Sequence record: MT135025.1
Direction: 5' to 3' (one strand)
DNA length: 64,000 nucleotides
Numbering within the stretch: position 1 is the stretch's first letter; every line of letters begins with the position of its first letter. Shown here piece by piece: positions 29,977 through 44,568 of the stretch. The notes below the pieces were generated by a model. The model ran no database searches and had not been told where the DNA came from. It saw only the letters and a list, made by a program, of their open reading frames with translations. Made by a program: the position numbers and the translations under genes.

Positions 29977-31413
29977 TTAAAAGCTGTAGCGATCAACGCC
30001 TACAGTTTTCAGCATGATCTTGACTGGCTCAAGCTCACCACCCAACAATGAAGTCAGGATAGATGGGCTACAACCCGATACCAGTGCAGTACCCGCTTCG
30101 CCAGCTTTAACCGGAACGTTGCCAAGACGACCACGAATGTTCCAGAAGACTAGTTGTGGCATTTCATAGCCAGCACGTGCGTACATAGCTTTGATTGCGT
30201 CGAAGTTTGCACGTTCGCCGCGACCATACCAGCCGCCACCAGTGTTTGCTTGGTCGAATTCCATGTCGCTCATGATAAGCAACTTGGTTGGCATTTCTTC
30301 TTGTGAAAGATTTGCACGTTTCGCACGCTCTAACAGAACGTTAAAGCATTTACCGATGTTTGTGCTCATGTCTTCACCTGAGCGATTCATGTTGTCAAGA
30401 CGCTCTTTTAGTGAGCTACCGCGCAACTGGTGGAAGTGCGGATCGCTTGAGAACGAAATGAACTGATCTTTGAAGATGCCTTCATTGCGTTCAGCAACAT
30501 AGATGCCAAGAGACATTGCAACTTGCTTACAAGTCACACCCGAACGATCTGTACCTGCGTTGATTGGCGTGCTCATAGAGCCAGATACGTCAACAACAGG
30601 GATGATGCGCTCATCAGAGCCTTCCATGTAGTTCGGCAGAGCTTTCCATTGCTCGTTCGCTACAGACGCATTGCCATGACTAACGCTCTTAACGACATCA
30701 TATGGGAACAATGCACCAGCGTTGATCTTCGCTTCACCTTTTTGAAGTGACTCGATGTAGCTTGTGTAACGAGCAGAAGCGTTACGACCGAATGCTTGTT
30801 GATAACGAGCAGACGCTACAGATGGCAACTTACCAAAGTCGATTGCATCCCATTCTTGAGCACACATCTTCTGTTCAACAGTGTCAGACAAAAGTGCTAG
30901 AATCTTACGCCACTGCTTCGCAGTTACACCAAGAGACTTGATTGTGCGCTTGAACACATGACCGTTTTTGCTGTTTTCACGTGGGAACCACTTAGCAGCA
31001 AGACCGTTCTTGTCGTTTACAATCGCGTTTGACCACAATGTGATCGCGTCTTTCTCAAGACTTGTACCGAACGCAGAAATCAAGTCGTCGAAACGACCTA
31101 GTTCTGGAATTTTCGACATTACAGCACGAGCTACGTCAGGCTGCTCATTACAAAGTTTAGTGAATAGAGTACGGAAAGTACCACGTTCACCCGCACCACC
31201 GCGAACATCACGAGACCATAAAAGAATGCGTGTCGCTAGTTCGGGGTTTTCTGCAAACGCACGACCGAACAGTGTTTTAGACTGATCGTTACCACGCATA
31301 GCAGCAATACCGAAGAACAAGTTTAGACACTCGTTACCTGAAGTGCTGTGAGTAACTGCACCGTTTGCTGTACGTGAATCGTTTGATTGCATAGCGTTCA
31401 TAAATGCTGACAT
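29977..31413 (-). CDS. Ro60/TROVE-like DUF2828 protein with C-terminal vWA domain
   Basis: RTANGA..STSGNECLNLF, RDVRGGAGER, GRFDDL, AKWFPRE, VVDVSGSM, SDMEFD, VFWN. Confidence 0.85.
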   Translation of the reverse strand: MSAFMNAMQSNDSRTANGAVTHSTSGNECLNLFFGIAAMRGNDQSKTLFGRAFAENPELATRILLWSRDVRGGAGERGTFRTLFTKLCNEQPDVARAVMSKIPELGRFDDLISAFGTSLEKDAITLWSNAIVNDKNGLAAKWFPRENSKNGHVFKRTIKSLGVTAKQWRKILALLSDTVEQKMCAQEWDAIDFGKLPSVASARYQQAFGRNASARYTSYIESLQKGEAKINAGALFPYDVVKSVSHGNASVANEQWKALPNYMEGSDERIIPVVDVSGSMSTPINAGTDRSGVTCKQVAMSLGIYVAERNEGIFKDQFISFSSDPHFHQLRGSSLKERLDNMNRSGEDMSTNIGKCFNVLLERAKRANLSQEEMPTKLLIMSDMEFDQANTGGGWYGRGERANFDAIKAMYARAGYEMPQLVFWNIRGRLGNVPVKAGEAGTALVSGCSPSILTSLLGGELEPVKIMLKTVGVDRYSF

Positions 31414-35154: not shown

Positions 35155-35355
35155 AGTGGCATGCTGCTCTCATGCTCAGACACATATTTGCTCTTATTGC
35201 AGGCGTGTGCCACGCGCAGCGCAGATCCCTTTTGATAATTTAATGACCAGCGGGACTCTTAGCAGGTCTTACACATAGCCTTTCAGCTATATCTTCTTTT
35301 AAGACCATAGTGTCGTACGGTCTAATCACTCTCTTTCGATTCGCGTTGCTAAGTG
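35155..35355 (-). ncRNA. Unidentified multi-hairpin RNA
   Basis: Non-coding; hairpins at 35159-35175, 35275-35290, 35302-35323. Confidence 0.45.
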
Positions 35356-35359
35356 AATT

Positions 35360-35436
35360 TGGTGCCCAACCCGAGATTCGAACTCGGATCATCTAGTGTT
35401 TGAAACTAGCGCCTCTGCCAATTGGACTAGTTGGGC
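35360..35436 (-). tRNA. tRNA-Leu(CAA)
   Basis: Cloverleaf, CCA. Confidence 0.92.
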
Positions 35437-35439
35437 TTG

Positions 35440-35550
35440 AATGAGCTGCCGCAACTCTTTAATCCCTAACGCCTGTCAGCTTTCGCCCGGCTGAGACCGT
35501 TTTCAACGGCGGTAGTCTAGCTTCGTGTAGAACGCGGCTTATGCTAGAGT
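35440..35550 (-). ncRNA. Unidentified GC-rich structured RNA
   Basis: GCCGC/GCGGC closure; CCGUU-GAA-AACGG and UCAGC..GCUGA hairpins. Confidence 0.45.
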
Positions 35551-35551
35551 T

Positions 35552-35628
35552 TGGTACGCACGGGCGGATTCGAACCGCCATCCCTGAGATTTTAAGCCTC
35601 ATGCCTCTGCCAATTGGACCACGTGCGC
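35552..35628 (-). tRNA. tRNA-Leu(UAA)
   Basis: Cloverleaf, CCA. Confidence 0.92.
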
Positions 35629-35630
35629 AG

Positions 35631-35704
35631 TGGAGCCCGAACAGAGAATCGAACTCTGACCGCGGGATTTGCAATCCCTCATACTTCCATTATACGATTC
35701 GGGC
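35631..35704 (-). tRNA. tRNA-Cys(GCA)
   Basis: Cloverleaf, CCA. Confidence 0.9.
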
Positions 35705-35712
35705 AATTTGTT

Positions 35713-35806
35713 AGTGCATTGCATGGACTACTGGCGATCTTAATGGGTATCTCAAGCATTCAGAATTCCCATGCGCTACTACAATGCTTTTTTCGCTAAA
35801 TGCACT
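35713..35806 (-). ncRNA. Unidentified RNA with 8-bp terminal stem
   Basis: AGUGCAUU/AAUGCACU termini; inner AUGGG/CCCAU. Confidence 0.4.
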
Positions 35807-35807
35807 T

Positions 35808-35884
35808 TGGGGTGACAGACGGGGATCGAACCCGCATCTTCCGGAATCACAACCCGGGGGTATTTCCACTTCACCCACTGCCAC
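35808..35884 (-). tRNA. tRNA-His(GUG)
   Basis: Cloverleaf, C discriminator, CCA. Confidence 0.88.
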
Positions 35885-35938
35885 ACCAAAGTACACTTTG
35901 GGATGTTTACGACATCAAACGAATGCGCTCCCTGTGCA

Positions 35939-36178
35939 TTAATCAGTTTTCTTTAAGTAGATACTATCAGGCGATAGCTCTCTCGTAAACATATTTTTGA
36001 AATAAATTTCGATGTCATCAGAAGTTGTTGAAGACTCAATTTCAAGAGCACGTTCTAAAATCTTACCGCGTTTATAACCAGCGCGCCAACAGTCAAACAT
36101 AAGTCTGTCCATGCGTTTCAGTTTTTCAATTTGGTTTTGATTTACGTATTCGTGAGTTTCAAGTAATACAGGCGTCAT
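35939..36178 (-). CDS. Hypothetical protein
   Basis: GAGAAA RBS. Confidence 0.7.
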   Translation of the reverse strand: MTPVLLETHEYVNQNQIEKLKRMDRLMFDCWRAGYKRGKILERALEIESSTTSDDIEIYFKNMFTRELSPDSIYLKKTD

Positions 36179-36201
36179 AATTTATTTCTCATCATAAAGA
36201 A

Positions 36202-36275
36202 TGGTAGTCCCTAGTGGAATCGAGCCACTTCTTTCTCTGTGTAAAAGAGACGTACTGCCATTATACTAAGGGACC
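36202..36275 (-). tRNA. tRNA-Val(UAC)
   Basis: Cloverleaf; T loop CUCGAUU variant. Confidence 0.85.
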
Positions 36276-36280
36276 AAAAT

Positions 36281-36354
36281 TGGAGCGGGTACACGGACTC
36301 GAACCGAGACGAACGACTTGGAAGGACGTCATGCTACCATTACATCATACCCGC
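36281..36354 (-). tRNA. tRNA-Gly(UCC)
   Basis: Cloverleaf, CCA. Confidence 0.88.
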
Positions 36355-36358
36355 ATTG

Positions 36359-36516
36359 TTAATCTGAAGCGTCGAACAAATCACGTATTGCACGCAGATT
36401 CGTAAGCTCTACAGTAAGTGTTCTTATAAAGAACGGGTTGGTCTCTTTCGCGAGACGATTTTCAACACAGCGAATCTTATCGCGTATGTTGCCCTTGCTT
36501 AGTGTAAAGTAGTCAT
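36359..36516 (-). pseudogene. Small gene with an apparent 1-nt frameshift
   Basis: GAGGA RBS + ATG gives MTTLH*; the open frame SKGNIRDKIR... continues in a shifted frame. Confidence 0.4.
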
Positions 36517-36541
36517 GCTTCTTATCCTCTTTGCTTGAATT

Positions 36542-36617
36542 TGGTGGAGACACCGATACTCGAAATCGGATCTAATGGCTTATGAGACCATTGCTCTACC
36601 ACTTGAGCTACATCTCC
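36542..36617 (-). tRNA. tRNA-Met(CAU)
   Basis: Cloverleaf, CCA. Confidence 0.88.
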
Positions 36618-36621
36618 AAAA

Positions 36622-36840
36622 GTAGTAATTAACTCATTTAATCGCACACGGGCTGACACCATATATTCATGGTCTGAGCGAGGAACCACATAGTGGGTAC
36701 TATTACCTCATCTTAGTTTTGATTGTTTTACATGACGATAACTAGAAACGTTCATAATAATGCCACGCGATACTTCCTGTATCACGGCTAACTGAGTTAG
36801 CATATCGTGCCTTTCGGCTGTAGTGTCGTTTCCGACGAAT
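36622..36840 (-). ncRNA. Unidentified multi-hairpin RNA region
   Basis: Hairpins GUCG-GAAA-CGAC, GCC-GAAA-GGC, GCUAAC-UCA-GUUAGC, GAUAC-AGGAA-GUAUC, ACCAU..AUGGU. Confidence 0.45.
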
Positions 36841-36847
36841 TAAGTAC

Positions 36848-37061
36848 AGACAATACCGAAGTGTTTTTTCGTCTTTAACATGAATCGGAGTTGACTATCT
36901 TGTTGCTTCTCAACAAGCAAATATCGTCTGTTTCAGCGACGCGCCTATCTGACTATTTCTAGGCAGAGAGAATCTTTCCTTTCAAGCTGCACCGAAGCAC
37001 TGCCCAGGTTAAGATCATTACCATTTTTAGTAAGATTTTAATTTGTTGCTGTATATTGTCT
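36848..37061 (-). ncRNA. Large structured RNA L2 (214 nt), paralogue of L1
   Basis: AGACAAUA/UAUUGUCU termini + CAGCAA; shared core with compensatory changes. Confidence 0.7.
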
Positions 37062-37122
37062 CTCAAACCATGCTCGTGATATGCCGAAGCAAGTATCATT
37101 CGCCGCATGATAGAGCTTAATC

Positions 37123-37198
37123 TGGCATCCCCAGAGGGATTCGAACCCACAACCCACGACTTAGAAGGTCGTTGCTCTTCCAATTGAGCTATGAGGAC
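37123..37198 (-). tRNA. tRNA-Arg(UCU)
   Basis: Cloverleaf, CCA. Confidence 0.92.
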
Positions 37199-37207
37199 GT
37201 TGAAAAG

Positions 37208-37273
37208 AATTCGATCCATGAGCTATTGCGTAGAAGATGGTAGTAAAGAGACTCTACACTCATGTGATCGAAA
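37208..37273 (-). ncRNA. Long imperfect hairpin RNA
   Basis: UUCGAUC..AUGAG..UAGA / UCUA..CUCAU.GAUCGAA. Confidence 0.4.
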
Positions 37274-37275
37274 TT

Positions 37276-37350
37276 TGGTGGACACGCAGGGAGTCGAACC
37301 CTATCTTCCTCATTGCAAGTGAGGCGCTTTCCCAATTAAGCTAACGGCCC
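37276..37350 (-). tRNA. tRNA-Ala(UGC)
   Basis: Cloverleaf, CCA. Confidence 0.9.
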
Positions 37351-37357
37351 ATAATTA

Positions 37358-37567
37358 TTACAACTGTGTGATTGAAATATGATCCCAGCCGTATAGACCT
37401 TCAAGCTCTTCAATCGGCTCACCAACAATATCAGAAATATATTCAGCAACTTTTGCTTCAATTTCTTCATCAGATAGTTTTTCATCAACGGAAAAAGCAT
37501 CTTCGTTATTGTTGCCACCGAAATAGCCACCAATGTCATATTCACACCATATTGAAATATAGTTCAT
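37358..37567 (-). CDS. Acidic hypothetical protein
   Basis: GAGAA RBS before MNYISIW. Confidence 0.7.
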   Translation of the reverse strand: MNYISIWCEYDIGGYFGGNNNEDAFSVDEKLSDEEIEAKVAEYISDIVGEPIEELEGLYGWDHISITQL

Positions 37568-37592
37568 GTTATTCTCACAGTTGTTTAGAAAA

Positions 37593-37668
37593 TGGTGCCC
37601 TGACACGGATTTGAACCGCGAACCTGCTCATTACAAGTGAGCTGCACTGCCAGTTGTGCTATCAGGGC
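37593..37668 (-). tRNA. tRNA-Thr(UGU)
   Basis: Cloverleaf, CCA. Confidence 0.92.
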
Positions 37669-37674
37669 GTTACT

Positions 37675-37787
37675 GAGTGTTATTACTTGCGTCGTCCAGA
37701 CCAGAGATACCAACTCTGAAAGGGAATCGAACCCCAAACATTTCTTTTCGTAAGAAGAATATTAGTAATTGTTTGCTGAAAACACTC
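37675..37787 (-). ncRNA. YrlA-like Y RNA (permuted tRNA mimic)
   Basis: Order: terminal stem + CAGCAA, T arm (GUUCGAUU), loop-closed acceptor CAGAG/CUCUG, D arm GUC-UGGAC-GAC, 3' strand. Confidence 0.75.
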
Positions 37788-37796
37788 TTCGGTATT

Positions 37797-37870
37797 TGGC
37801 AGGGGATAACGGATTCGAACCGGTACTGCGTGAGTCAAAGTCACGTATGCTGCCTTTACATCAATCCCCT
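37797..37870 (-). tRNA. tRNA-Gln(UUG)
   Basis: Cloverleaf, CCA. Confidence 0.9.
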
Positions 37871-37889
37871 ATTATTCTTAAATTATCTT

Positions 37890-37965
37890 TGGCGGAACCG
37901 ACGGGGCTCGAACCCGCTTCCTTTCCCGTGACAGGGGAATATGCACCCAGTTACACCTCGGCTCC
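37890..37965 (-). tRNA. tRNA-Asp(GUC)
   Basis: Cloverleaf, CCA. Confidence 0.9.
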
Positions 37966-38033
37966 CCAAAGACAACTTAAATTAGTTGCTTTGTTTTTCA
38001 AGTTCACACTTAACGGTAGTGACTCTCCGAATT

Positions 38034-38109
38034 TGGCGCTTCATGTTGGACTCGAACCAACGACTCTCTGATTAACAGTCAGACACTCTACCAACTGAGT
38101 TAATGAAGC
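38034..38109 (-). tRNA. tRNA-Asn(GUU) 1
   Basis: Cloverleaf, CCA. Confidence 0.92.
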
Positions 38110-38110
38110 G

Positions 38111-38185
38111 TGGCGGGCGTGGAGAATTTCGAAATCTCGACCTTCAAGTTAACAGCTTGCTGCTCTGCCTCTGAGCTACACACCC
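38111..38185 (-). tRNA. tRNA-Asn(GUU) 2
   Basis: Cloverleaf, CCA. Confidence 0.88.
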
Positions 38186-38189
38186 TTTA

Positions 38190-38260
38190 AATTAAACAGC
38201 AATCCTTTTCTCTTTTTCCAAATAAAAGTTTTGTATTGTTTGCTGAAAGATTGCTTAATT
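38190..38260 (-). ncRNA. Minimal Y-like RNA Y2
   Basis: AGCAAUC/GAUUGCU stem + UUU CAGCAA; shares UUCAGCAAACAAU with the YrlA-like RNA. Confidence 0.6.
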
Positions 38261-38263
38261 CTG

Positions 38264-38452
38264 TTACAACGTAAACTGCTCGACTTTACAAGAGTCAACA
38301 TCGTCAAACTTTTCGATTCGTCTAGCTAACATTTTAGCCTTTCGCTCAATCGAACGATCTTCGTAACCGAATTCAGATTTGTTATTGTCACAAGCTAATG
38401 CGCTCGACTTGACAACAGTCGAATCATTCATTACCATCACTAGTCTGTACAT
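38264..38452 (-). CDS. Hypothetical protein
   Basis: GAGGTG RBS. Confidence 0.6.
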   Translation of the reverse strand: MYRLVMVMNDSTVVKSSALACDNNKSEFGYEDRSIERKAKMLARRIEKFDDVDSCKVEQFTL

Positions 38453-38468
38453 AAACACCTCTGATAAT

Positions 38469-38542
38469 TGGCAGGGACATAGAGATTCGAACTCTAACGA
38501 ACGGGTTTGGAATCCGTCATGCTGCCTTTACATCATGTCCCT
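38469..38542 (-). tRNA. tRNA-Trp(CCA)
   Basis: Cloverleaf, CCA. Confidence 0.9.
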
Positions 38543-38548
38543 AAAATT

Positions 38549-38622
38549 TGGTAGCCCCAGACAGACTCGAACTGTCAACGTGCGATTATCGGTCGCGTGT
38601 TTTACCGTTAAACTATGGAGCT
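38549..38622 (-). tRNA. tRNA-Ile(GAU)
   Basis: Cloverleaf; loop CCGAUAA (C33). Confidence 0.85.
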
Positions 38623-38686
38623 AAAGTGAGCACATTACAGTGCTCGTGTTAATCGGTTAAGCGACTAAACTTCCCGGTTAACTAAT

Positions 38687-38785
38687 TGGCGGAAGACTAG
38701 GGATTCGAACCCTAACATCACCTCCCGGTGACCGACGGTTTTCAAGACCGTTGCCGCTACCCAGAATCTTTCGGCTAAGCCTTCC
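38687..38785 (-). tRNA. tRNA-Ser(UGA) with enlarged D loop
   Basis: Long variable arm; D loop AAAGAUUCUGGGUA. Confidence 0.85.
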
Positions 38786-38792
38786 ATTAATT

Positions 38793-38869
38793 TGGTTGCG
38801 TGGGGCTGGATTCGAACCAGCGTTCTCCGGCTTATGAGACCGACGAGATGACCACTTCTCTACCCCGCA
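38793..38869 (-). tRNA. tRNA-Met(CAU), initiator-like
   Basis: GCGGGGUAGAGAAG..UCGUCGG body; one bulged acceptor nucleotide. Confidence 0.8.
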
Positions 38870-38879
38870 ATTATTCAAC

Positions 38880-38963
38880 AGCTTGCGTTCTTTGGTCTGT
38901 TTATCGCTGTCTGAGTACTCGTCTAGCGATCAATAGATTAAGTTGAATTGCAGTATGCAAGCT
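38880..38963 (-). ncRNA. Minimal Y-like RNA Y3
   Basis: AGCUUGC/GCAAGCU stem + AUA CUGCAA; inner AUCGCU/AGCGAU helix. Confidence 0.6.
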
Positions 38964-38968
38964 AAAAC

Positions 38969-39054
38969 TGGTGGAGCGTAGAGGAATCGAACCTCTCTAC
39001 CCGTTAAGGGTCAGGGATTTACAGTCCCCTGTCTCACCTTGAGACGTACGCTCC
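38969..39054 (-). tRNA. tRNA-Tyr(GUA)
   Basis: Cloverleaf with variable arm, CCA. Confidence 0.9.
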
Positions 39055-39060
39055 AGAATA

Positions 39061-39135
39061 TGGTTCTCCCGACGAGATTCGAACTCGCGCACTTCACCTT
39101 GAAAGGGTGATGACCTACCGTTAGTCCACGGGAGA
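39061..39135 (-). tRNA. tRNA-Glu(UUC)
   Basis: Cloverleaf, CCA. Confidence 0.92.
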
Positions 39136-39198
39136 ATTAAATTGTATATTGATTTGCAAGCTATTTAACTCGCAAAGCGATACACAATGTATCTAATT

Positions 39199-39275
39199 TG
39201 GTACGCCGCCCTGGACTCGAACCAGACACCTGAGAGTTAAAAGCTCCCTGCTCTTCCATGATGAGCTACCGACGC
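39199..39275 (-). tRNA. tRNA-Lys(UUU) 1
   Basis: Cloverleaf, CCA. Confidence 0.9.
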
Positions 39276-39286
39276 ATTATAAAATC

Positions 39287-39361
39287 TGGTGGGTCGCATG
39301 AGATTCGAACTCACACCGGTCTGGTTAAAAGCCAGATGTACTACCGTTATACGAACGACCC
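39287..39361 (-). tRNA. tRNA-Lys(UUU) 2
   Basis: Cloverleaf, CCA. Confidence 0.9.
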
Positions 39362-39367
39362 AGAATG

Positions 39368-39442
39368 TGGTGCACCCCCTCGGAATCGAACCGAGCACTG
39401 CGGGACTTCAATCCGCCGCTTTTCCTGATAAGCTAAGGGTGC
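39368..39442 (-). tRNA. tRNA-Phe(GAA)
   Basis: Cloverleaf; loop UUGAAGU. Confidence 0.85.
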
Positions 39443-39443
39443 A

Positions 39444-39520
39444 TGGTACGCATGAAGAGATTCGAACTCTTATCATTCGGCTTCTAAGACCGACGCCTCT
39501 GCCAATTGGGCTACATGCGC
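39444..39520 (-). tRNA. tRNA-Leu(UAG)
   Basis: Cloverleaf, CCA. Confidence 0.9.
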
Positions 39521-39545
39521 ATTAAATTTTGTAAACTTCTTTTCT

Positions 39546-39576
39546 TCATTGTACATGATGTTTATATCGTTGTAAA
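39546..39576 (-). promoter_or_regulatory. T4-like early promoter within the RNA cluster
   Basis: GTTTAC-N18-TACAAT. Confidence 0.6.
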
Positions 39577-39739
39577 CATCTTTTTGAAATATTTTGAAGA
39601 ACTTAACGTTTTCATTTCTATGTGTTAATATTAACACTCACTCAAGACATCTTAAACACTAATTTGTGAAAAAGTTCGTTAAATTCTATCATCACGACAG
39701 TACTTAACGAGATACGGTCCTAAGCGTATCATATAAATT

Positions 39740-39863
39740 CAGAATGGTGAGACTTGAACTCACTTCGAGTAATAGCGTAAACTAACAGTTGTTGCCAGAG
39801 GCTATCAATTATTCTCTACCGAGTATGTTGCAACTCTGCATTTCCCCATTTCTAGGCATTCTG
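39740..39863 (-). ncRNA. tRNA-body chimera C1 (expanded anticodon arm, no CCA)
   Basis: CAGAAUG/CAUUCUG acceptor, GUGAG-UUCAAGU-CUCAC T arm, insert with AGAG/CUCU then GGCAAC. Confidence 0.6.
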
Positions 39864-39868
39864 AAATA

Positions 39869-39944
39869 TGGCACCCAATACAAGATTCGAACTTGTAACC
39901 TTCGCCTTCGTAGGGCGCTGCTCTTCCAATTGAGCTAATCGGGC
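39869..39944 (-). tRNA. tRNA-Arg(ACG)
   Basis: Cloverleaf, CCA. Confidence 0.92.
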
Positions 39945-39952
39945 ATTAAAAC

Positions 39953-40029
39953 TGGTCCGTGACAAGCGATTCGAACGCTTAACTTCTCCGCCCCAAACGG
40001 AGTACTCTACCAGATTGAGCTAGTCACGG
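39953..40029 (-). tRNA. tRNA-Pro(UGG) 1
   Basis: Cloverleaf, CCA. Confidence 0.9.
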
Positions 40030-40038
40030 ATTTTAAAT

Positions 40039-40112
40039 TGGTCGGGACGAAGAGACTCGAACTCTTACCACATGCTCCCAAAGCATGAACGCTGCCTTTA
40101 CGCCACGTCCCG
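40039..40112 (-). tRNA. tRNA-Pro(UGG) 2
   Basis: Cloverleaf, CCA. Confidence 0.9.
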
Positions 40113-40187
40113 TTTGTTCTTTAACTTTGTTTATCATACTCTGCATTCAAAGTACGTTAAACAAAATTTTTTGATTTCCTTCGCCCA

Positions 40188-40213
40188 TAAAAAAGGACGC
40201 TACGTGCGTCCTC
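40188..40213 (-). terminator. Terminator
   Basis: aggacgc-acgta-gcgtcct + T6 on the minus strand. Confidence 0.75.
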
Positions 40214-40481
40214 AAGTATACTTCTATGTTATACTATTGGACTACGTTTGTGGAGACCACTCTTGTTTCGCACACGGATTCGCTAGATACACGAATTCTG
40301 AGCGCAGAAAATCGCTGCGTAAAATCATATCAGAATGTGTATTCGAATGTGTCATGGAAACTCTCTAAACGTTAAAATAAAAATGTTTTTGTTTGTATAA
40401 TAGTACTTATAACACCAATTTTGACGATTTGCGGTATTTTCGCAGAAAATTGAAAAAAAAATTCAACTTTCTGCGATTTTC

Positions 40482-40715
40482 TTATCGACCTAGGTGTTTT
40501 CGCTTGTTCATTTCAACAAGAATTTCATCGTTGTAATGGCGGTTCAGTTCAACATACTTCTTGTGTTGATCTGAAGTCAACTCGTTAGTGTCATTCAGAT
40601 GCTTCAAGAACCCAAGAGGTTTGCGAAACGACTTGCGATATTCGTTCAGACGCTCGTCCGTTAGATTATGCAGTTGTTTCGGAGTCAGTAAAGTTTTATT
40701 GATGTCAAAACTCAT
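40482..40715 (-). CDS. Hypothetical protein
   Basis: GAGGT RBS before MSFDINK. Confidence 0.7.
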   Translation of the reverse strand: MSFDINKTLLTPKQLHNLTDERLNEYRKSFRKPLGFLKHLNDTNELTSDQHKKYVELNRHYNDEILVEMNKRKHLGR

Positions 40716-40740
40716 GTTGTACCTCACTTGTTATTAAAAT

Positions 40741-40856
40741 TGGTAGTCGGGGCTGGATTCGAACCAGCGACCACGTGCTTAACAGGCAATTGAAGGAGTG
40801 CTGGAGCGATACTTGTCAGTATCATTCTTCGTGCTCTACCACTGAGCTACCCGACT
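40741..40856 (-). ncRNA. tRNA-Asn(GUU) body with a 41-nt insert in the anticodon stem (C2)
   Basis: Removing the insert gives CGUGC-CUGUUAA-GCACG; insert has GAUACU-GACA-AGUAUC + CAGCAC. Confidence 0.8.
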
Positions 40857-40861
40857 ATGAA

Positions 40862-41383
40862 TTATTTAACTTTGAACTTCAAATTACGCCAGTCAAAGTT
40901 TCGTTTGTTCTTTGTGCTATAGAACGTGCCCCAATCAATAGCAATAGGACAGTTCTTACTCCCCACACGAGCGATAAAGACATCGTGAGTCTCGCTGTAA
41001 CGCTCTCTAAGCTCTTTTACGCGCTTATCGTAGTTAGCGATATACTCTGCACAAGCTTTGTTGTAATCAGCTTTAGAGAAGCGTTCATTGCTTGCAAAGA
41101 CACGCCCGAGGTACGGTCGAATAACACGCACTCGCTCTTTAGACCAGCCCATACTGAAGCTGTTTTCAATCTCGCCAGTGATTTTACCAGTCTTCTTACA
41201 TCTAGCAAGAATAACCCAACAACGCTCACGTCGAAAATCTTTTCGTACGTACACGTTAACGTGCTTGTCAATGTACTCTTGGTAACGAGCGTTATACTCA
41301 GCACGCAGTTTATTGCGTACTTCAGGAGACATTGCAGCGCGTTCTTCTTTCGAAAACGCTTGTGCGAATTTCAATGGTTTCAT
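40862..41383 (-). CDS. Hypothetical basic protein
   Basis: GAGGA RBS before MKPLKF. Confidence 0.8.
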   Translation of the reverse strand: MKPLKFAQAFSKEERAAMSPEVRNKLRAEYNARYQEYIDKHVNVYVRKDFRRERCWVILARCKKTGKITGEIENSFSMGWSKERVRVIRPYLGRVFASNERFSKADYNKACAEYIANYDKRVKELRERYSETHDVFIARVGSKNCPIAIDWGTFYSTKNKRNFDWRNLKFKVK

Positions 41384-41396
41384 TATAATTTCCTCT

Positions 41397-41636
41397 TGGC
41401 GCCGCTCGTGTGAATCGAACACACGTCAAACACAACACCTCGTCCACCCGATTAGAGTTTCGAAGTAAGAGCTAATCAGCATTTCGGAGCAGTCGAGCGT
41501 TATTTCTACGAGTGAGCTTTCGACAACTCACACGCACTTTCTACTCGGTCCCAGTGATTCGGTACCAACACAGGTTGCGAACCTATGTCTGCACTAATGT
41601 TGGGAAAACACTGCGTATTGTACACCAGTTAGCGGC
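41397..41636 (-). ncRNA. 240-nt tmRNA-shaped RNA with tRNA-like ends
   Basis: GCCGCU/AGCGGC acceptor, GUGUG-UUCGAUU-CACAC T arm, G-CCA end; ~190-nt multi-hairpin interior. Confidence 0.7.
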
Positions 41637-41643
41637 ATTTTAT

Positions 41644-41874
41644 TTAAAGATAGCTGTCAAATACATCATCATCAACTTCTTCAATATTGATGTCAGCGTA
41701 ACATTCATTCGCAATTGCTTGAATTTCATCTATTGAAACTGTACCTGAGTACAAAACAACAGCGTCATCCGGAATCACAACATCACACATGTATTTGTTA
41801 AACATTGCAGTTCTGAAATCAGAATCAACAGAGTAACCGTGCATTGATGTGATAACTAGCAATTTATGTGACAT
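41644..41874 (-). CDS. Hypothetical protein
   Basis: TTGACA-N17-TAGTAT promoter, GAGGA RBS. Confidence 0.75.
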   Translation of the reverse strand: MSHKLLVITSMHGYSVDSDFRTAMFNKYMCDVVIPDDAVVLYSGTVSIDEIQAIANECYADINIEEVDDDVFDSYL

Positions 41875-41951
41875 AATGTTTTCCTCGTGTAGTTGATAAT
41901 GTGTATACTACACGTTGATGAAACGCCTGTCAACAACTTTTTCAATTTTTT

Positions 41952-42028
41952 TGGTAGCCCCTCTCGGATTCGAACCGAGAACCTGACGATTATGAGTCGT
42001 CTGCTACTACCGTTACAGCTAAGGGGCT
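41952..42028 (-). tRNA. tRNA(CAU), Ile2-like
   Basis: GCCCCUUAGCU...GACUCAUAAUCG resembles lysidine tRNA-Ile2. Confidence 0.85.
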
Positions 42029-42395
42029 ATCGTTCTAGAAATCGACCGACTTTAGCAGCGAAGATGTTTGCTTCTTCTGCAATCAAAGCAGTTGATTTCA
42101 TTTGATGAAAAGCGTCTTGTTGATGCAGGACATCTAGTTTACCAGCGCATTTCATCAGTTCTTTTACTGATTGCATAATCTCAATGTTATCAATCTGACT
42201 CGTGTCAGGGTGATGGTTGAGACTATCCAAGATAGGGAGTACTTGTTGATAGTAACCCATGCCGATGAAGTTTATCATAAGTCTGTACTGCATTTCAACA
42301 GCAAATGTACAATATTTTCGAAGATTGCGTTTTACAATCTCACAACGATGCAAGATACAATCAAGCTCGTCATTTATGTCATCAAACTTATTCAT
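42027..42395 (-). CDS. Hypothetical protein
   Basis: GAGG RBS before MNKFDD. Confidence 0.7.
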   Translation of the reverse strand: MNKFDDINDELDCILHRCEIVKRNLRKYCTFAVEMQYRLMINFIGMGYYQQVLPILDSLNHHPDTSQIDNIEIMQSVKELMKCAGKLDVLHQQDAFHQMKSTALIAEEANIFAAKVGRFLER

Positions 42396-42409
42396 AAAAC
42401 CTCGAAAAT

Positions 42410-42533
42410 TGGTGGAGAGTGATGGATTTGAACCACCGACCAAAAGATTTACCTAGTTATTAAGGTTTGCAGCATGAATGCTTGTCAGTATTCTTTAACA
42501 TTCTTTTGCTCTACCAGACTGAGCTAACTCTCC
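42410..42533 (-). ncRNA. tRNA-body chimera C3 (anticodon loop replaced by motif domain, CCA present)
   Basis: AAAGA/UCUUU stem encloses GAAU-ACUGACAAGC-AUUC + AUG CUGCAA. Confidence 0.75.
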
Positions 42534-42543
42534 AGAATTTGAG

Positions 42544-42654
42544 GGTGAAGTACAGGACTCGAACCTGCGACCTCCGGCGTGCAATACATGCAGCATGAAA
42601 TCTTAACAGATTTCTTTTTAGGCCGGCATTCTAACCAACTGAACTAACTTCACC
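42544..42654 (-). ncRNA. tRNA-Asp-like body chimera C4
   Basis: CCGGC/GCCGG stem encloses GAAAUCU-GUUA-AGAUUUC + AUG CUGCAU. Confidence 0.75.
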
Positions 42655-42664
42655 AATGTAAAAA

Positions 42665-42802
42665 CATATAGTTGCGGGTGTAGGATTCGAACCTACATCA
42701 CGATCTTATGAATGATATGCGAAATTGGTTGCCGTACAGATTCTTATCAGAATCAGTTTTGTGCTACGTGTGCTACCACTTACACCAACCCGCAACTATA
42801 TG
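42665..42802 (-). ncRNA. tRNA-body chimera C5 (CAU loop retained, extended acceptor stem)
   Basis: Insert GAUUCU-GAUA-AGAAUC + UGUA CGGCAA; ~15-bp terminal helix, no CCA. Confidence 0.75.
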
Positions 42803-42869
42803 CTTTCGGGATGCTTACGCAGGTTCTTCTCTACGTAAGCACAGATCCTCAATGTATATTTTGCCTTAG

Positions 42870-43025
42870 CTAATCACAACACAACCCAATATCGTGCGCT
42901 TTAATTACGGGATTGATGACCCGTTCGCATGTGATTAGCGTAAAAGTATGATTACGCACCTTTTCTTCTTCAATGTCCAAGGCAAAGAGGACTATGAATA
43001 CCAGTGCGAGAAGATATACAATCAA
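42870..43025 (-). CDS. Small membrane protein
   Basis: GAGG RBS + TTG start; N-terminal hydrophobic stretch. Confidence 0.45.
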   Translation of the reverse strand: MIVYLLALVFIVLFALDIEEEKVRNHTFTLITCERVINPVIKAHDIGLCCD

Positions 43026-43048
43026 ATTGCTCACCTCGCTTAATAAGT

Positions 43049-43195
43049 GAGAGTACATTGGTCGAGTGTAACGGAATCGAACCGTTCCCACGATCTCCCT
43101 ATGATATGCGTAAATTGGTTGCTGAATATAATCATGTCTGATTACAGTATGCTACGTGTGCTGCCACTACACCAACACTCGACCAATATACTCTC
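43049..43195 (-). ncRNA. tRNA-body chimera C6 (paralogue of C5, extended acceptor stem)
   Basis: Insert UAAUC..GAUUA + UUCAGCAACCAAUUU; ~20-bp terminal helix. Confidence 0.75.
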
Positions 43196-43200
43196 GATAT

Positions 43201-43344
43201 TTTAAATGTGCGCTACTTGCACGCCGACTGAGCGAATTTTAACTCAGCTAGTTTTTGTTTGAGACATCGTCCGCTAAGACTATTCTCTGCATGCCAGAAC
43301 TTATACTGGCTCTATGTATTCATTTCGGCTAACGCACATTTAAA
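43201..43344 (-). ncRNA. Unidentified ~144-nt structured RNA
   Basis: 12-bp terminal stem UUUAAAUGUGCG/CGCACAUUUAAA; GCCAG..CUGGC and CUGAG..CUCAG hairpins. Confidence 0.55.
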
Positions 43345-43349
43345 ATATT

Positions 43350-43583
43350 ACTCATCTTCAGAGAAGAGACAGAAACGATGAGTCTAGTCTGTTTAATCAA
43401 TGTTGTTCATCTTCAAGAAGAGGCGAGAACGATGAACTTAGCTCGCTTAATCAATTGTGTTAATCTTATCAGCTTCTCAGCGAAAGTCAACATCTTTTTT
43501 CAAATATTTCATCGAGTTGAAAGTTTGTTTTCTGTCTCTCGACTCGATGAAATACATTCTACATCCTTTTCAGATGAAGTCAA
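43350..43583 (-). promoter_or_regulatory. Tandem promoters and structured leader of the RNA operon
   Basis: TTGACT-N16-TAGAAT (43583-43556), TTGACT-N16-TAAGAT (43490-43463); three leader hairpins. Confidence 0.7.
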
Positions 43584-43599
43584 CAACTATTTTAACTTT

Positions 43600-43854
43600 T
43601 TAAACGGAAATGATAATGCCGCTTTCAGTCTCACCTCGTTCAAGCGCAGCGTGCTTGATCTGAAGTTGTGATACTGCTTGCTGAAGTTCAATAATAGCTT
43701 TGTCATAAAGCTTGTTGTTCTCTTTAAGCAAAGCAATCTGATCGGTCTGCATACCAATGATGTACGTTAGTAGAACAACGTTCTCATCAGTCGTCAGCGT
43801 TTCAGGCGCTTCATTGTACTTCTTCAGCACCGCTTCGGTAGATAGATCAGTCAT
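43600..43854 (-). CDS. Coiled-coil hypothetical protein
   Basis: Coupled to 57B. Confidence 0.7.
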   Translation of the reverse strand: MTDLSTEAVLKKYNEAPETLTTDENVVLLTYIIGMQTDQIALLKENNKLYDKAIIELQQAVSQLQIKHAALERGETESGIIISV

Positions 43855-44302
43855 TATTAGCAACCCATTCTAGATCTAATGGTTCGATATATTCATCGAC
43901 AAGGCGAACCTCTGTATTGATGAACATAGGGGTGATTACGTCGTCATAAGACAATGTGACGTGCGGAGTATAGTCAGGGTAATCGTGAGTACCACCGATA
44001 GAGATAAGGTCTTCGTGACGTTCTACAAGAGCAGGACATGACATCTTAGCAACGACCGCGTGTTTACCGTCTTGCGTTTTCCAACAGTCAACTTGTTCAA
44101 CAGTGGCAACGAAAGTGGTATCTACAACAGGCACATCAATTTGCTTACGACTATAAAGCACAGTCACGTGAAATTTATCTGGATCTAACGGATTTTTTAG
44201 ACGAAGCGTTTTTTGCAAGCGAACTAGCTCTTGCTTACTTGCTTCGTCTAATTTGATACCAACGTAAGTTCCCTGACTCTCAAGGAACTTAGATAGTTTC
44301 AT
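43847..44302 (-). CDS. 57B: 2H phosphoesterase gp57B / Acb1-like anti-CBASS nuclease
   Basis: Two HxT motifs (FHVTVLYS, PHVTLSY); T4 synteny. Confidence 0.88.
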   Translation of the reverse strand: MKLSKFLESQGTYVGIKLDEASKQELVRLQKTLRLKNPLDPDKFHVTVLYSRKQIDVPVVDTTFVATVEQVDCWKTQDGKHAVVAKMSCPALVERHEDLISIGGTHDYPDYTPHVTLSYDDVITPMFINTEVRLVDEYIEPLDLEWVANND

Positions 44303-44568
44303 TATTCAGCTTCTTTCTCTTTTTCGCCGTCGCCTTCTACAGGGCGTTCAGCTTTACCGGTTAGATAAGCGACTTCATCAACATAGTTCTGTAGAGAACT
44401 TGCTTTTTCTTGATCGAAGTCTAGCAGTTGAGCTAGTACACCAACGAATTGACCAAATGAATTGCGTTCAGCTTGAAGTGCTTCTTGCAAGTCAAATGTA
44501 CGAACTTTCAGATCTTTGATTTGCGCTTCTTTCTGTTCGATTACTTGTTCTGGAGTTTGTTGTGACAT
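44302..44568 (-). CDS. 57A: Tail-fibre assembly chaperone
   Basis: LKVRTFDLQE coiled coil; synteny between genes 1 and 57B. Confidence 0.75.
   Translation of the reverse strand: MSQQTPEQVIEQKEAQIKDLKVRTFDLQEALQAERNSFGQFVGVLAQLLDFDQEKASSLQNYVDEVAYLTGKAERPVEGDGEKEKEAE

What the first reader, a model, noticed from the sequence alone, without database searches (positions are those of the whole stretch)
39740..42654. tRNA bodies whose anticodon loop is replaced by the motif domain (C1, C3, C4)
Seen: C3 (42410-42533, with CCA) and C4 (42544-42654, Asp-like body CCGGC/GCCGG) have canonical acceptor, D and T arms. Their anticodon stems close a large loop with a hairpin followed by the identical AUGCUGCA. 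C1 (39740-39863) is a looser version. Topologically this is a YrlA-type RNA opened at the acceptor end instead of the Ro stem, i.e. a circular permutation of the 37675-37787 RNA. C2 and C4 derive from Asn and Asp (GUN, queuosine-class) tRNAs in a phage that encodes queE; any link is speculation.
Basis: partly seen in the sequence, partly recalled or inferred. Interest (0 to 1): 0.75.

Follow-up and report, generated by a model that had tools for sequence, protein, structure and literature searches.

The report
tRNA-shaped Y RNAs of a vibriophage
The "pseudo-tRNAs" of this KVP40-like Vibrio phage are conserved tRNA-shaped RNAs carrying a hairpin-plus-motif module in the anticodon arm; the same module lies beside a Ro60-like protein gene in many unrelated phages, so they are most likely rearranged Y RNAs, the partner RNAs of Ro60 proteins.

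Summary
The window is Vibrio phage V07 (KVP40-like), and all the RNAs are on the minus strand.

**Observation.**
- C3 (42410-42533) and C4 (42541-42653) are real. Each has a full acceptor, D and T arm and a 5-bp anticodon stem.
- That stem closes a 39-55 nt insert: an A-rich linker, a 6-7 bp hairpin with a GNNA loop, then the motif U-n-C-n-G-C-A.
- AUGCUGCA is the local form of this motif. KVP40's C4 has AUUCUGCA.
- Three more units exist: C2 40741-40856, C5 42669-42794 and C6 43059-43181.
- C1 is not a detectable member.

**Conservation.** Thirty-one units from Vibrio, Cronobacter, Synechococcus and Aeromonas phages show compensatory changes in all four modelled helices.

**Link to a protein.**
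- In the three non-Vibrio lineages the units lie next to a roughly 470-aa DUF2828/vWA gene. The window copy is 29977-31413(-).
- Its predicted fold best matches Ro60.
- The same helix-plus-CAGCAA motif flanks this gene in 74 of 78 viral contigs.
- In several phages it sits in YrlA topology, with the order motif, T arm, closed acceptor, D arm.
- A profile of the units, cut open at the hairpin loop and rejoined at the acceptor, matches those RNAs end to end.

**Verdict.** The units are circularly permuted, tRNA-topology Y-like RNAs. Binding, processing and function are untested. This is a new variant of a known kind.

The parts
42410..42533 (-). C3: a 124-nt tRNA-topology Y-like RNA. Acceptor 42527-42533 with 42414-42420; D arm 42508-42524; anticodon stem 42502-42506 with 42443-42447; module hairpin 42476-42493; motif AUGCUGCAAAC 42465-42475; T arm 42421-42437; encoded ACCA 42410-42413. 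This is KVP40 'tRNA-Pseudo-4'.
   Evidence: Rfam tRNA 55.5 bits with a 49-nt insertion. R1 102.9 bits. Anatomy. KVP40 annotation.
42541..42653 (-). C4: tRNA-topology Y-like RNA. Acceptor 42647-42653 with 42545-42551; D arm 42628-42644; anticodon stem CCGGC/GCCGG 42622-42626 with 42574-42578; module hairpin 42597-42614; motif AUGCUGCAUGU 42586-42596; T arm 42552-42568. No CCA is encoded. This is KVP40 'tRNA-Pseudo-5'.
   Evidence: Rfam tRNA 55.5 bits with a 39-nt insertion. R1 87.7 bits. Anatomy. Orthologues in KVP40, phi-Grn1, D479 and Aeromonas APT65.
40741..40856 (-). C2: a unit with the module inserted in the 5' strand of the anticodon stem (CG | module | UGC). A complete Asn-type arm follows (loop CUGUUAA 40779-40785) and ACCA is encoded. 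It is packed between two ORFs, so no alternative reading is possible. This is KVP40 'tRNA-Pseudo-3'.
   Evidence: Rfam tRNA 49.8 bits. R1 102.5 bits.. The split stem covaries in D479 (CG|AGC with GCUCG) and in Synechococcus phage ZZ01 (ACG|GC with GCCGU).
42669..42794 (-). C5: a unit of the second body type (D arm GUGUAAGUGGUAGCAC). The module is bulged from the anticodon stem (CG | module | AUC). The loop has 8 nt. Motif UGUACGGCAACC.
   Evidence: R1 100.1 bits.. Not found by the Rfam tRNA model or by ARAGORN.
43059..43181 (-). C6: a unit of the second body type. Motif UAUUCAGCAACC, loop AUAGGGA, encoded ACCA.
   Evidence: R1 89.4 bits..
39740..39863 (-). C1: a doubtful or degenerate element. 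It has a 7-bp acceptor-like stem, a T-arm-like hairpin and GCAAC strings, but no D arm and no module hairpin.
   Evidence: R1 8.8 bits. No HMM hit. Present in KVP40 but absent from phi-Grn1, F86, D482 and 1.081.O.
29977..31413 (-). Ro60-like protein gene (478 aa; DUF2828 plus DUF7788/vWA; invariant D275-x-S277-x-S279, which fits the DxSxS MIDAS pattern). It is on the same strand as the tRNA/unit cluster and downstream of it.
   Evidence: Pfam. phrog_850 'RNA-binding protein'. AlphaFold2 model with pLDDT 84.9. The only Foldseek hits below E 0.001 are Ro60 (9l5y, 1yvp), TM 0.50-0.61. Invariant residues from alignment A5. Homologues in 710 phage genomes.
37675..37790 (-). It has a terminal stem (GAGUGUU with AACACUC), the motif UUUUCAGCAAAC, a T-arm-like hairpin and a D-like hairpin. 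It is weakly related to the units.
   Evidence: Sequence and fold. No Rfam YrlA match at E up to 1. Weak HMM hit from motif to T arm, 12-16 bits.

Best explanation
C3 and C4, together with C2, C5 and C6, are phage Y-like RNAs built on a complete tRNA fold. They are the likely RNA partners of the phage's Ro60-like ring protein (29977-31413).

**Structure.**
- Each unit is a cloverleaf with normal acceptor, D and T arms.
- Its anticodon arm carries a conserved module: an A-rich linker, a 6-7 bp helix capped by a GNNA loop, then the single-stranded motif U-n-C-n-G-C-A(A).
- The same helix-plus-motif element forms the terminal stem of YrlA-type and simpler Y-like RNAs next to the homologous gene in other phages.
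- The units are therefore circular permutations of those RNAs. The protein-binding stem is closed by a tetraloop and the acceptor stem is open.

**Proposed mechanism (inferred, not shown).**
1. The units are transcribed with the tRNA cluster.
2. They are matured like tRNAs: RNase P at the 5' end and CCA at the 3' end. CCA is encoded in C2, C3 and C6.
3. The module binds the Ro-like ring.
4. The tRNA body acts as the tether or effector domain. It docks the ribonucleoprotein onto tRNA-recognising factors such as nucleases, repair enzymes or CCA-adding enzymes, for RNA surveillance or repair or for counter-defence during infection.
For: **The units are real and under selection.**
- R1 gives a clean gap: units score 67.6 bits or more, ordinary tRNAs 51 or less.
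- 21 of 22 modelled pairs show compensatory changes, including all six pairs of the module hairpin.
- U, C and GCA of the motif are invariant in 31 of 31 units from 10 phages.
- All 31 units form a 5/5 anticodon stem, either contiguous or split by the module.

**Link to the Ro-like gene.**
- In Synechococcus phage ZZ01, Cronobacter phage S13 and Aeromonas phage APT65, two or three units lie within a few hundred bases of a 467-468 aa DUF2828/DUF7788 gene.
- A CAGCAA-type motif on the gene's strand within 700 nt occurs at 1.49 per kb. The antisense rate is 0.16 per kb and the distal rate 0.26 per kb. It is present in 74 of 78 IMG/VR loci.

**Same module in YrlA topology.**
- MsGreen, KP2025, L084 and L086 carry stem, CAGCAA, T arm, closed acceptor, D arm, AAAAC and the returning stem strand.
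- These RNAs hit Rfam YrlA below threshold, at 34-43 bits.
- The permuted-unit HMM aligns to them end to end, at 40-49 bits and E 1e-12 to 1e-14.

**The protein is Ro60-like.** The model has pLDDT 84.9, and the only strong fold matches are Ro60 of Thermus phage phiLo and of Xenopus.

**Precedents.**
- M. smegmatis YrlA is cut by RNase P in its acceptor stem and receives CCA in vivo while bound to Rsr (PMC4201824).
- A phage Ro60 binds phage Y-like RNAs (PMC12135203).
Against: - No RNA data exist. Expression, ends, stability and protein binding are not shown. The public runs holding this sequence gave only DNA-like contigs.
- In the window the Ro-like gene is 9-13 kb from the units, not adjacent to them.
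- Many loci with the gene have the motif but no tRNA-like RNA, so the tRNA body is not required for the system.
- In several loci the gene sits beside a tRNA cluster, which could inflate co-occurrence with tRNA-like sequences.
- The motif differs from the GNCGAAN0-1G Ro-site motif of YrlA.
- The protein is not recognised as TROVE by Pfam.
- The covariation counts come from an alignment fitted to the model.
Confidence: 0.65

Rival explanations
1. They are intron-containing tRNA genes. The module would be excised and the halves ligated, for example by phage RNA ligases, to give functional tRNAs.
For: - C2, Synechococcus unit a and Synechococcus unit b reconstitute perfect anticodon arms (CUGUUAA for Asn, AUCAUAA for CAU) once the module is looped out.
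- Annotators using tRNAscan call them tRNA-Asn, Phe, Cys or Val.
- Alanine is the only amino acid without an ordinary tRNA in the window. C4 could be read as CU...UGCAC, which would give a UGC anticodon.
Against: - The 'intron' is the most conserved part of the unit.
- The anticodon-like loops of the C5, C6 and Glu-like types vary in sequence and in length (7-9 nt), and one lacks U33.
- C3 and C4 types have no anticodon loop at all.
- The UGC reading of C4 is lost in D479 and APT65.
- C2's Asn anticodon is redundant with two ordinary tRNA-Asn genes.
- No ribozyme or intron family matched at E up to 1.
- The same module occurs in RNAs with no tRNA body (Listeria AG20 and the L018 group).
Confidence: 0.08
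2. They are tRNA-mimic decoys or regulators that act without the Ro-like protein. Examples would be sponges for host anticodon nucleases, for tRNA-modifying enzymes or for RNase P.
For: - The tRNA tops are complete and CCA is encoded in C2, C3 and C6.
- The GUU anticodon loop is conserved in the C2 type across Vibrio phages and a cyanophage.
- The units lie inside the tRNA cluster, 9-13 kb from the Ro-like gene.
Against: - This does not explain why the helix-plus-motif module is invariant.
- It does not explain why the same module tracks the Ro-like gene in 74 of 78 loci, or why units are adjacent to the gene in three unrelated lineages.
- Most unit types have no conserved anticodon loop to act as bait.
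Confidence: 0.15
3. They are decayed tRNA pseudogenes with junk insertions, as annotated in KVP40.
For: - KVP40 annotates them as tRNA-Pseudo-3, -4 and -5.
- ARAGORN does not call them.
- C1 does look degenerate.
Against: - All helices are maintained by compensatory changes.
- The motif is invariant.
- Orthologous types are shared by Vibrio, Cronobacter, Aeromonas and Synechococcus phages.
Confidence: 0.03
4. The functional RNAs are ordinary YrlA-topology molecules that span neighbouring units (3' half of one unit plus 5' half of the next). On this view the tRNA-like reading is an artefact of a tandem array.
For: - Rfam YrlA gives its only window hit across the C4/C3 junction (42475-42596, 30.4 bits).
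- The permuted HMM scores 53-57 bits at the C5/C4 and C4/C3 junctions.
Against: - Acceptor strands pair perfectly (7 of 7) within each unit but not between neighbours, from a hand comparison of the sequences (about 5 of 7 for C4 with C3).
- Each module hairpin is self-complementary, with its own sequence and a 4-nt loop.
- C2 and C6 are solitary, and C2 is boxed in by ORFs 5 and 14 nt away.
- Encoded CCA follows the acceptor 3' strand in C2, C3 and C6.
- The unpermuted HMM scores higher, at 68-79 bits, although that HMM was built from these same units.
Confidence: 0.05

Closest known systems
YrlA (Rfam RF02553), the tRNA-like bacterial Y RNA bound by Ro60/Rsr (Chen et al. 2014, PMC4201824)
   Same: - It combines a protein-binding helix-plus-motif element with a tRNA-like domain made of T arm, acceptor-like stem and D arm.
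- It is encoded near a Ro60-type HEAT-ring plus vWA protein.
- It also occurs in phages.
- YrlA-topology relatives carrying this very module sit next to the homologous gene in MsGreen, KP2025, L084 and L086.
   Different: - The topology is circularly permuted. In the window the RNA ends are at an open 7-bp acceptor, some units encode CCA, and the protein-binding helix is capped by a tetraloop.
- An anticodon stem is kept, and in C2-type units a whole anticodon arm.
- The motif is UnCnGCA(A), not GNCGAAN0-1G.
- The partner protein is DUF2828, not Pfam TROVE.
- The score is far below the family threshold: 30.4 bits against 69.
RNase P-cleaved, CCA-tailed M. smegmatis YrlA (PMC4201824)
   Same: In vivo the acceptor hairpin of this Y RNA is opened by RNase P and receives CCA. 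The Rsr-bound RNA then has free tRNA-like acceptor ends, the same end state as that proposed for the window units.
   Different: That RNA becomes two pieces held together by base pairing. The window units are single chains, because the Ro-side stem is covalently closed.
KVP40 'tRNA-Pseudo-3/4/5' and tRNAscan 'intron-containing tRNA' annotations in related phages
   Same: These are the same loci, at 96-100% identity.
   Different: The annotation treats them as defective or intron-bearing tRNAs. The comparative evidence here shows a conserved non-tRNA module and a link to a Ro-like gene.
Thermus phage phiLo Ro60 with Yrl1 and Yrl2 (PMC12135203)
   Same: A phage-encoded Ro60-fold protein binds phage-encoded Y-like RNAs whose genes lie next to its own. 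It is the top structural match to the window protein.
   Different: - The phiLo RNAs are simple stem-bulge-stem Y RNAs with a CGAA motif and no tRNA topology.
- The proteins share only about 15% identity.
T4 stable RNAs rnaC and rnaD (species 1 and 2) in the syntenic tRNA region
   Same: They are small stable RNAs of unknown function in the tRNA cluster of a related phage. rnaC has a T arm and acceptor-like ends.
   Different: They show no similarity to R1 and lack the module.

Membership tests
tRNA (RF00005) | Cloverleaf with acceptor, D, anticodon and T arms scoring above the Rfam gathering score | tested here: met
   C3 and C4 score 55.5 bits and C2 49.8 bits, against a gathering score of 29. 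C5 and C6 are not detected by Rfam.
tRNA (RF00005) | Seven-nucleotide anticodon loop with U33 and a conserved anticodon, able to decode | tested here: not met
   C3 and C4 have 49- and 39-nt 'loops'. C5 and C6 types have variable loops of 7-9 nt. Only the C2 type keeps CUGUUAA, and there the stem is interrupted by the module.
tRNA (RF00005) | Aminoacylation and use in translation | not testable with these tools
   This needs charging assays or tRNA-seq.
YrlA (RF02553) | Match to the family covariance model at the gathering score (69 bits) | tested here: not met
   The only window hit is 30.4 bits across the C4/C3 junction. The 37675-37790 RNA gives no hit. YrlA-topology relatives in other phages score 34-43 bits.
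YrlA (RF02553) | tRNA-like domain with T arm, D arm and acceptor-like stem | tested here: met
YrlA (RF02553) | Terminal stem formed by the RNA's 5' and 3' ends, carrying the Ro60 site (GNCGAAN0-1G) | tested here: not met
   The equivalent helix is a capped hairpin inside the RNA. Its motif is UnCnGCA(A).
YrlA (RF02553) | Encoded next to a Ro60 orthologue and bound by it | tested here: inconclusive
   The units are adjacent to the Ro-like gene in the Synechococcus, Cronobacter and Aeromonas phages. In the window they are 9-13 kb away on the same strand. Binding was not tested.
Ro60/TROVE protein family (for the partner, 29977-31413) | HEAT-repeat ring plus vWA domain with a MIDAS motif | tested here: met
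   The only Foldseek hits below E 0.001 are Ro60 (9l5y, 1yvp), with TM 0.50-0.61 over 513-577 aligned columns. D275, S277 and S279 are invariant and fit the DxSxS MIDAS pattern.
Ro60/TROVE protein family (for the partner, 29977-31413) | Sequence match to the Pfam TROVE domain | tested here: not met
   Pfam reports only DUF2828 and DUF7788. The profile search against PDB gives only E 0.02 to TROVE proteins.
Self-splicing or other known tRNA introns and ribozymes | Match to a known intron or ribozyme family within the insert | tested here: not met
   No such Rfam match at E up to 1 in 39500-44500.

The most novel reading that the evidence does not exclude
The tRNA-topology units are two-in-one molecules. 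They would be matured, CCA-tailed and perhaps aminoacylated like tRNAs, while permanently carrying a Ro-like ring on the anticodon arm. The phage could then deliver an RNA-surveillance or RNA-repair protein to tRNA-handling machinery, or use Ro-loaded tRNA look-alikes to trap host tRNA-targeting defence nucleases. The Asn-type anticodon arm kept in C2-type units would serve as bait. This would be a new class of phage counter-defence ribonucleoprotein. It would also be the first natural circular permutation linking tRNA and Y RNA architectures.
Probability: 0.2. Interest if true: 0.85.

Novelty: new variant of a known kind. Interest (0 to 1): 0.7.

Why it matters
- **Annotation.** Five long-standing "pseudo-tRNAs" of the model vibriophage KVP40 and its relatives become members of a conserved RNA class, with a candidate protein partner.
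- **A testable binding site.** The Ro-like protein family phrog_850/DUF2828 occurs in 710 sequenced phage genomes, including Felixounavirus, Listeria, Staphylococcus, Campylobacter and mycobacteriophages. A conserved helix plus UnCnGCA(A) RNA signature lies beside its gene. I found no description of this signature in the literature searched. It gives a concrete, mutable binding-site hypothesis.
- **Evolution of Y RNAs.** The same functional module exists in three settings: a simple stem-closed RNA, a YrlA topology and a true tRNA topology. This is a natural experiment on how Y RNAs evolved from tRNAs and on what the tRNA-like domain is for, which is an open question in the Ro60 field.
- **Practical use.** Covariance models like R1 could stop annotation pipelines from calling these loci intron-bearing or pseudo tRNAs.

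Tried and rejected
- **RNA evidence.** The look-up of sequencing runs returned four small runs of unknown kind that hold the sequence, plus host-label RNA runs. Laying the four holders gave only long DNA-like contigs of related phages and no RNA ends.
- **gp57B as a probe.** Fetching relatives from IMG/VR with gp57B gave only 2 loci. I switched to the phage GenBank collection and to the Ro-like protein.
- **Octamer significance.** TGCAGCAT alone is not enriched: 4 copies against 2.8 expected.
- **Loose descriptors.** A loose hairpin-plus-CNGCA scan gave equal counts on both strands. A stricter descriptor finds the five units but has a background of about 5 per shuffled window. The module is therefore informative only in context.
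- **T4 rnaC and rnaD.** Their folds show a T arm in rnaC. Neither resembles R1.
- **Intron or ribozyme reading.** No Rfam ribozyme or intron hit.
- **Recent duplication of the phage's own tRNAs.** No close match of unit bodies to any of the 28 window tRNAs. An Asp origin for C4 could not be verified. The resemblance of its D arm to bacterial tRNA-Asp, and of the Cronobacter-a type to tRNA-Glu, is from memory only.
- **The 37675-37790 RNA as a YrlA member.** No Rfam hit.
- **Literature.** Searches for DUF2828, Ro-like plus phage plus tRNA, TROVE plus cyanophage, and phage tRNA introns found no description of these RNAs.
- **First structure job.** I redid it without those rows.

Full report
**What the window is.** The region is 100% identical to Vibrio phage V07 and 96% identical to KVP40, a T4-related Schizotequatrovirus. 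All the features discussed lie on the minus strand, in the tRNA cluster between genes 57B/1/3 and the tail-fibre genes. T4 has the syntenic arrangement. ARAGORN finds 28 ordinary tRNAs covering every amino acid except alanine.

**Checking the observation.**
- The Rfam tRNA model hits three further loci with large insertions in the anticodon region: 42413-42533 (C3, 55.5 bits, 49-nt insertion), 42544-42653 (C4, 55.5 bits, 39-nt insertion) and 40744-40856 (C2, 49.8 bits). These are KVP40's "tRNA-Pseudo-4, -5 and -3".
- Read directly, C3 and C4 each have a perfect 7-bp acceptor stem and canonical D and T arms. The usual U8, A14, GG and UUCRAnU positions are present.
- Each has a 5-bp anticodon stem (AAAGA/UCUUU and CCGGC/GCCGG). 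It closes an A-rich linker, an 18-nt hairpin and AUGCUGCA.
- C3 encodes ACCA. C4 encodes no CCA.
- The octamer by itself is not significant, but the composite unit is.

- I built covariance model R1 from 11 such RNAs.
- It scores five window loci at 87.7-102.9 bits: C2 40741-40856, C3, C4, C5 42669-42794 and C6 43059-43181. Every ordinary tRNA in twelve loci scores 51 bits or less.
- C1 (39740-39863) does not belong. It scores 8.8 bits with filters off and gets no hit from sequence HMMs. It has no D arm and no module hairpin.
- C1 is also missing from phi-Grn1, F86, D482 and 1.081.O, although the sequence flanking it on one side (39534-39731) is conserved there.

**Conservation and structure.**
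- Related units occur throughout the Schizotequatrovirus clade. They also occur in Cronobacter phage S13, Synechococcus phage BUCT-ZZ01 and Aeromonas phage APT65.
- On 31 units (29 distinct sequences), 98.4% of cells pair and 21 of 22 modelled pairs show changes on both sides. This includes all six pairs of the insert hairpin. Slid controls give 37-47% pairing. One caveat applies: the alignment was fitted to the model.
- The hairpin loop is G-n-n-A. Its first G is invariant.
- Immediately 3' of the hairpin, U, C and G-C-A are invariant in 31 of 31 units. The consensus is nAUnCnGCAAyC.
KVP40's C4 has AUUCUGCA, C6 has UAUUCAGCA and C5 has UGUACGGCA.
- All 31 units can form a 5/5 anticodon stem. 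In C3- and C4-type units the stem is contiguous and the module fills the "loop".
- In C2-, C5- and C6-type units the module is bulged out of the 5' strand after about two pairs, and a 7-9 nt loop follows. This split stem covaries: CG|UGC with GCACG, CG|AGC with GCUCG, ACG|GC with GCCGU, and CG|AUC with GAUCG against CG|GAA with UUCCG.
- C2-type units keep an Asn-type loop in Vibrio phages and in the cyanophage: CUGUUAA, or CCGUUAA in D479. The loops of the other types vary in sequence and length.

**The link to a Ro-like protein.**
- In the three non-Vibrio lineages, two or three units lie within a few hundred bases of a 467-468 aa gene with Pfam DUF2828 plus DUF7788 (a vWA-type domain).
- The window encodes the homologue at 29977-31413(-). 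It is on the same strand as the tRNA cluster and downstream of it. PHROGs calls it phrog_850, "RNA-binding protein".
- An AlphaFold2 model (pLDDT 84.9, pTM 0.85) has only two strong Foldseek matches in the PDB, and both are Ro60: Thermus phage phiLo 9L5Y and Xenopus 1YVP. E values are 1e-6 to 6e-6 and TM scores 0.50-0.61 over the whole length.
- D275, S277 and S279 are invariant in alignment A5 and fit the DxSxS MIDAS pattern.
- Pfam TROVE is not matched. The protein therefore has a Ro60-like fold but belongs to a separate sequence family.
- tblastn finds it in 710 phage genomes. Some mycobacteriophage copies are already annotated "Ro-like RNA binding protein".

**The motif tracks the gene.**
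- I fetched 80 IMG/VR loci encoding relatives of the protein, out of 539 found.
- In 78 of them, [A/T/G]CAGCAA on the gene's strand within 700 nt of the gene occurs 154 times, or 1.49 per kb. The antisense count is 17, and the distal rate is 0.26 per kb. At least one copy is present in 74 of the 78 loci.
- In about 40 loci with no tRNA-like sequence, a conserved non-coding region of roughly 380 nt follows the gene. It contains a stem strand directly followed by UUACAGCAAAC, the returning strand further on, and a terminator.
- Listeria phage AG20 has three simple stem-closed RNAs of the same design upstream of the gene.

**The permutation.**
- In mycobacteriophage MsGreen, Klebsiella phage KP2025 and contigs L084 and L086, the RNA next to the gene reads in this order: stem strand, CAGCAA motif, variable-loop-like segment, T arm, closed acceptor hairpin, D arm, "AAAAC(G)", returning stem strand. 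That is YrlA topology.
- Rfam YrlA hits these RNAs at 34-43 bits, below its gathering score of 69.
- In the window units the same two flanks, AAAACG on one side and the motif on the other, border a helix that is closed by a tetraloop. The acceptor is open.
- To test this, I cut the 31 units at the hairpin loop in silico, joined them at the acceptor and built an HMM. It aligns in a single collinear hit covering nearly its whole length (positions 1-106 of about 110; 11-97 in MsGreen) to the RNAs in L090, L084, L085, L086, MsGreen and KP2025. Scores are 40-49 bits and E values 1e-12 to 1e-14.
- On several of these loci (L084, L090, L085) the top hits of the unpermuted HMM cover only part of the model. 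In the tandem arrays of L086, L084, L095 and L085 it also finds near-full-length hits at adjacent positions.
- In the window the reverse holds: unpermuted hits are 68-79 bits and full length, and permuted hits appear only at tandem junctions. The window comparison is not independent, because the HMMs were built from these units.
- The alternative that the real RNAs span neighbouring units is unlikely. Acceptor strands pair 7 of 7 within each unit but poorly between units. C2 and C6 are solitary, with C2 boxed in by ORFs. Encoded CCA follows the acceptor 3' strand in C2, C3 and C6.

**What is known.**
- Ro60 orthologues with tRNA-like Y RNAs (YrlA) are established in bacteria and in some phages (PMC4201824).
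- M. smegmatis YrlA is even cut by RNase P in its acceptor stem and receives CCA in vivo while bound to Rsr. This is a natural "opened acceptor".
- A phage Ro60 binding phage Y-like RNAs, and host PNPase, has been solved (PMC12135203).
- ROT/TROVE proteins in jumbo phages have been noted in passing (PMC7824862).
- The KVP40 loci have been treated only as pseudo-tRNAs (PMC3468402).
- I found no description of the UnCnGCA(A) module, of its link to DUF2828 proteins or of the tRNA-topology form.

**Mechanism: what is shown and what is inferred.**
- Shown by computation: the units are a conserved, structured RNA class, they share a module with RNAs flanking Ro-like genes, and the protein has a Ro60-like predicted fold.
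- Inferred: the module is the protein's binding site, the units are processed like tRNAs, and the tRNA body serves as the tether or effector domain of a phage ribonucleoprotein acting on tRNA or RNA surveillance, repair or counter-defence.
- An RtcB-type "tRNA splicing ligase" gene lies about 1.2 kb from the Ro-like gene in Listeria phage AG20. This echoes the bacterial rsr-yrlBA-rtcBA arrangement, which I cite from established knowledge.
- No RNA-level data could be obtained.

**Rivals.** The rivals are intron-bearing tRNAs, Ro-independent decoys, pseudogenes and a tandem-array artefact. They are weighed in their own sections. The intron model is the most serious, and a single Northern blot or tRNA-seq experiment would separate it from the main explanation.

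**Verdict.**
It is weak in its chosen comparator and in the Asp and queuosine details.
- This is a new variant of a known kind, of solid interest to RNA and phage biologists.

Noticed in passing
window 41397-41640 (-): A structured intergenic RNA of about 240 nt. It ends in a T arm (GUGUG UUCGAUU CACAC), a 6-7 bp acceptor-like stem and GCCA, directly upstream of the ribosome-binding site and ATG (41385) of the next ORF. RNAfold gives -81.7 kcal/mol. It looks like a giant tRNA-like RNA in the style of T4 rnaC. It lacks the UnCnGCA module.
   Followed up: partly
window 37675-37790 (-): A stem-closed RNA with the motif UUUUCAGCAAAC just after its 5' stem strand, plus a T-arm-like and a D-like hairpin. 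It probably belongs to the same Ro-linked RNA family in the unpermuted Y-RNA layout, but it does not match Rfam YrlA.
   Followed up: partly
L017-L053 (for example L018:5423-5790), IMG/VR contigs: A conserved non-coding region of about 380 nt lies directly downstream of the Ro-like gene and ends in a terminator. It has two CAGCAA motifs (GGUUCC-UUACAGCAAAC...GGAACC and GGUACAGCAAAAAGUAC) and a conserved 3' domain. No Rfam family matches at the gathering score.
   Followed up: partly
L097 (Listeria phage AG20) 2170-2430 and 5255-6503: Three tandem simple stem-closed RNAs of the form stem, UAACAGCAAUUAC ... AAAAAACG, returning stem strand, UGUAAA lie upstream of the Ro-like gene. An annotated 'tRNA splicing ligase' (RtcB) and a metal-dependent phosphohydrolase lie 0.6-1.2 kb downstream.
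   Followed up: no
window 39534-39731: A non-coding stretch next to C1 is conserved across the whole Schizotequatrovirus clade at 77-97% identity. It contains an internal repeat of about 60 nt. A promoter-like site lies just beyond its low-coordinate end (minus strand, 39576-39548).
   Followed up: no
window 42870-43091 (-): This ORF, annotated in KVP40 as KVP40.0319, starts with GTG inside the 3' part of unit C6. It has no Pfam or PHROG match. The gene call or its start may be spurious.
   Followed up: no
window 34830-42028: The 28 ordinary tRNAs cover 19 amino acids, and only alanine is missing. Rfam also calls a tRNA at 37279-37350 (44.9 bits) that ARAGORN does not. It lies at about the position of KVP40 'tRNA-Pseudo-1', but I did not map the coordinates.
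   Followed up: no
L095 (Klebsiella phage KP2025) 2405-2836: The record annotates a 432-nt 'tRNA-Arg' that runs into the start of the DUF2828 gene. This is an annotation artefact of intron-tolerant tRNA prediction next to this system.
   Followed up: no
window 43583-43463 (-) and 40213-40193 (-): Promoter-like sites lie upstream of C6 and a strong terminator-like hairpin lies downstream of C2. Together they suggest one transcription unit carrying C6, C5, C4, C3, tRNA-Met, three small ORFs, the 240-nt RNA and C2. These are consensus matches only.
   Followed up: no
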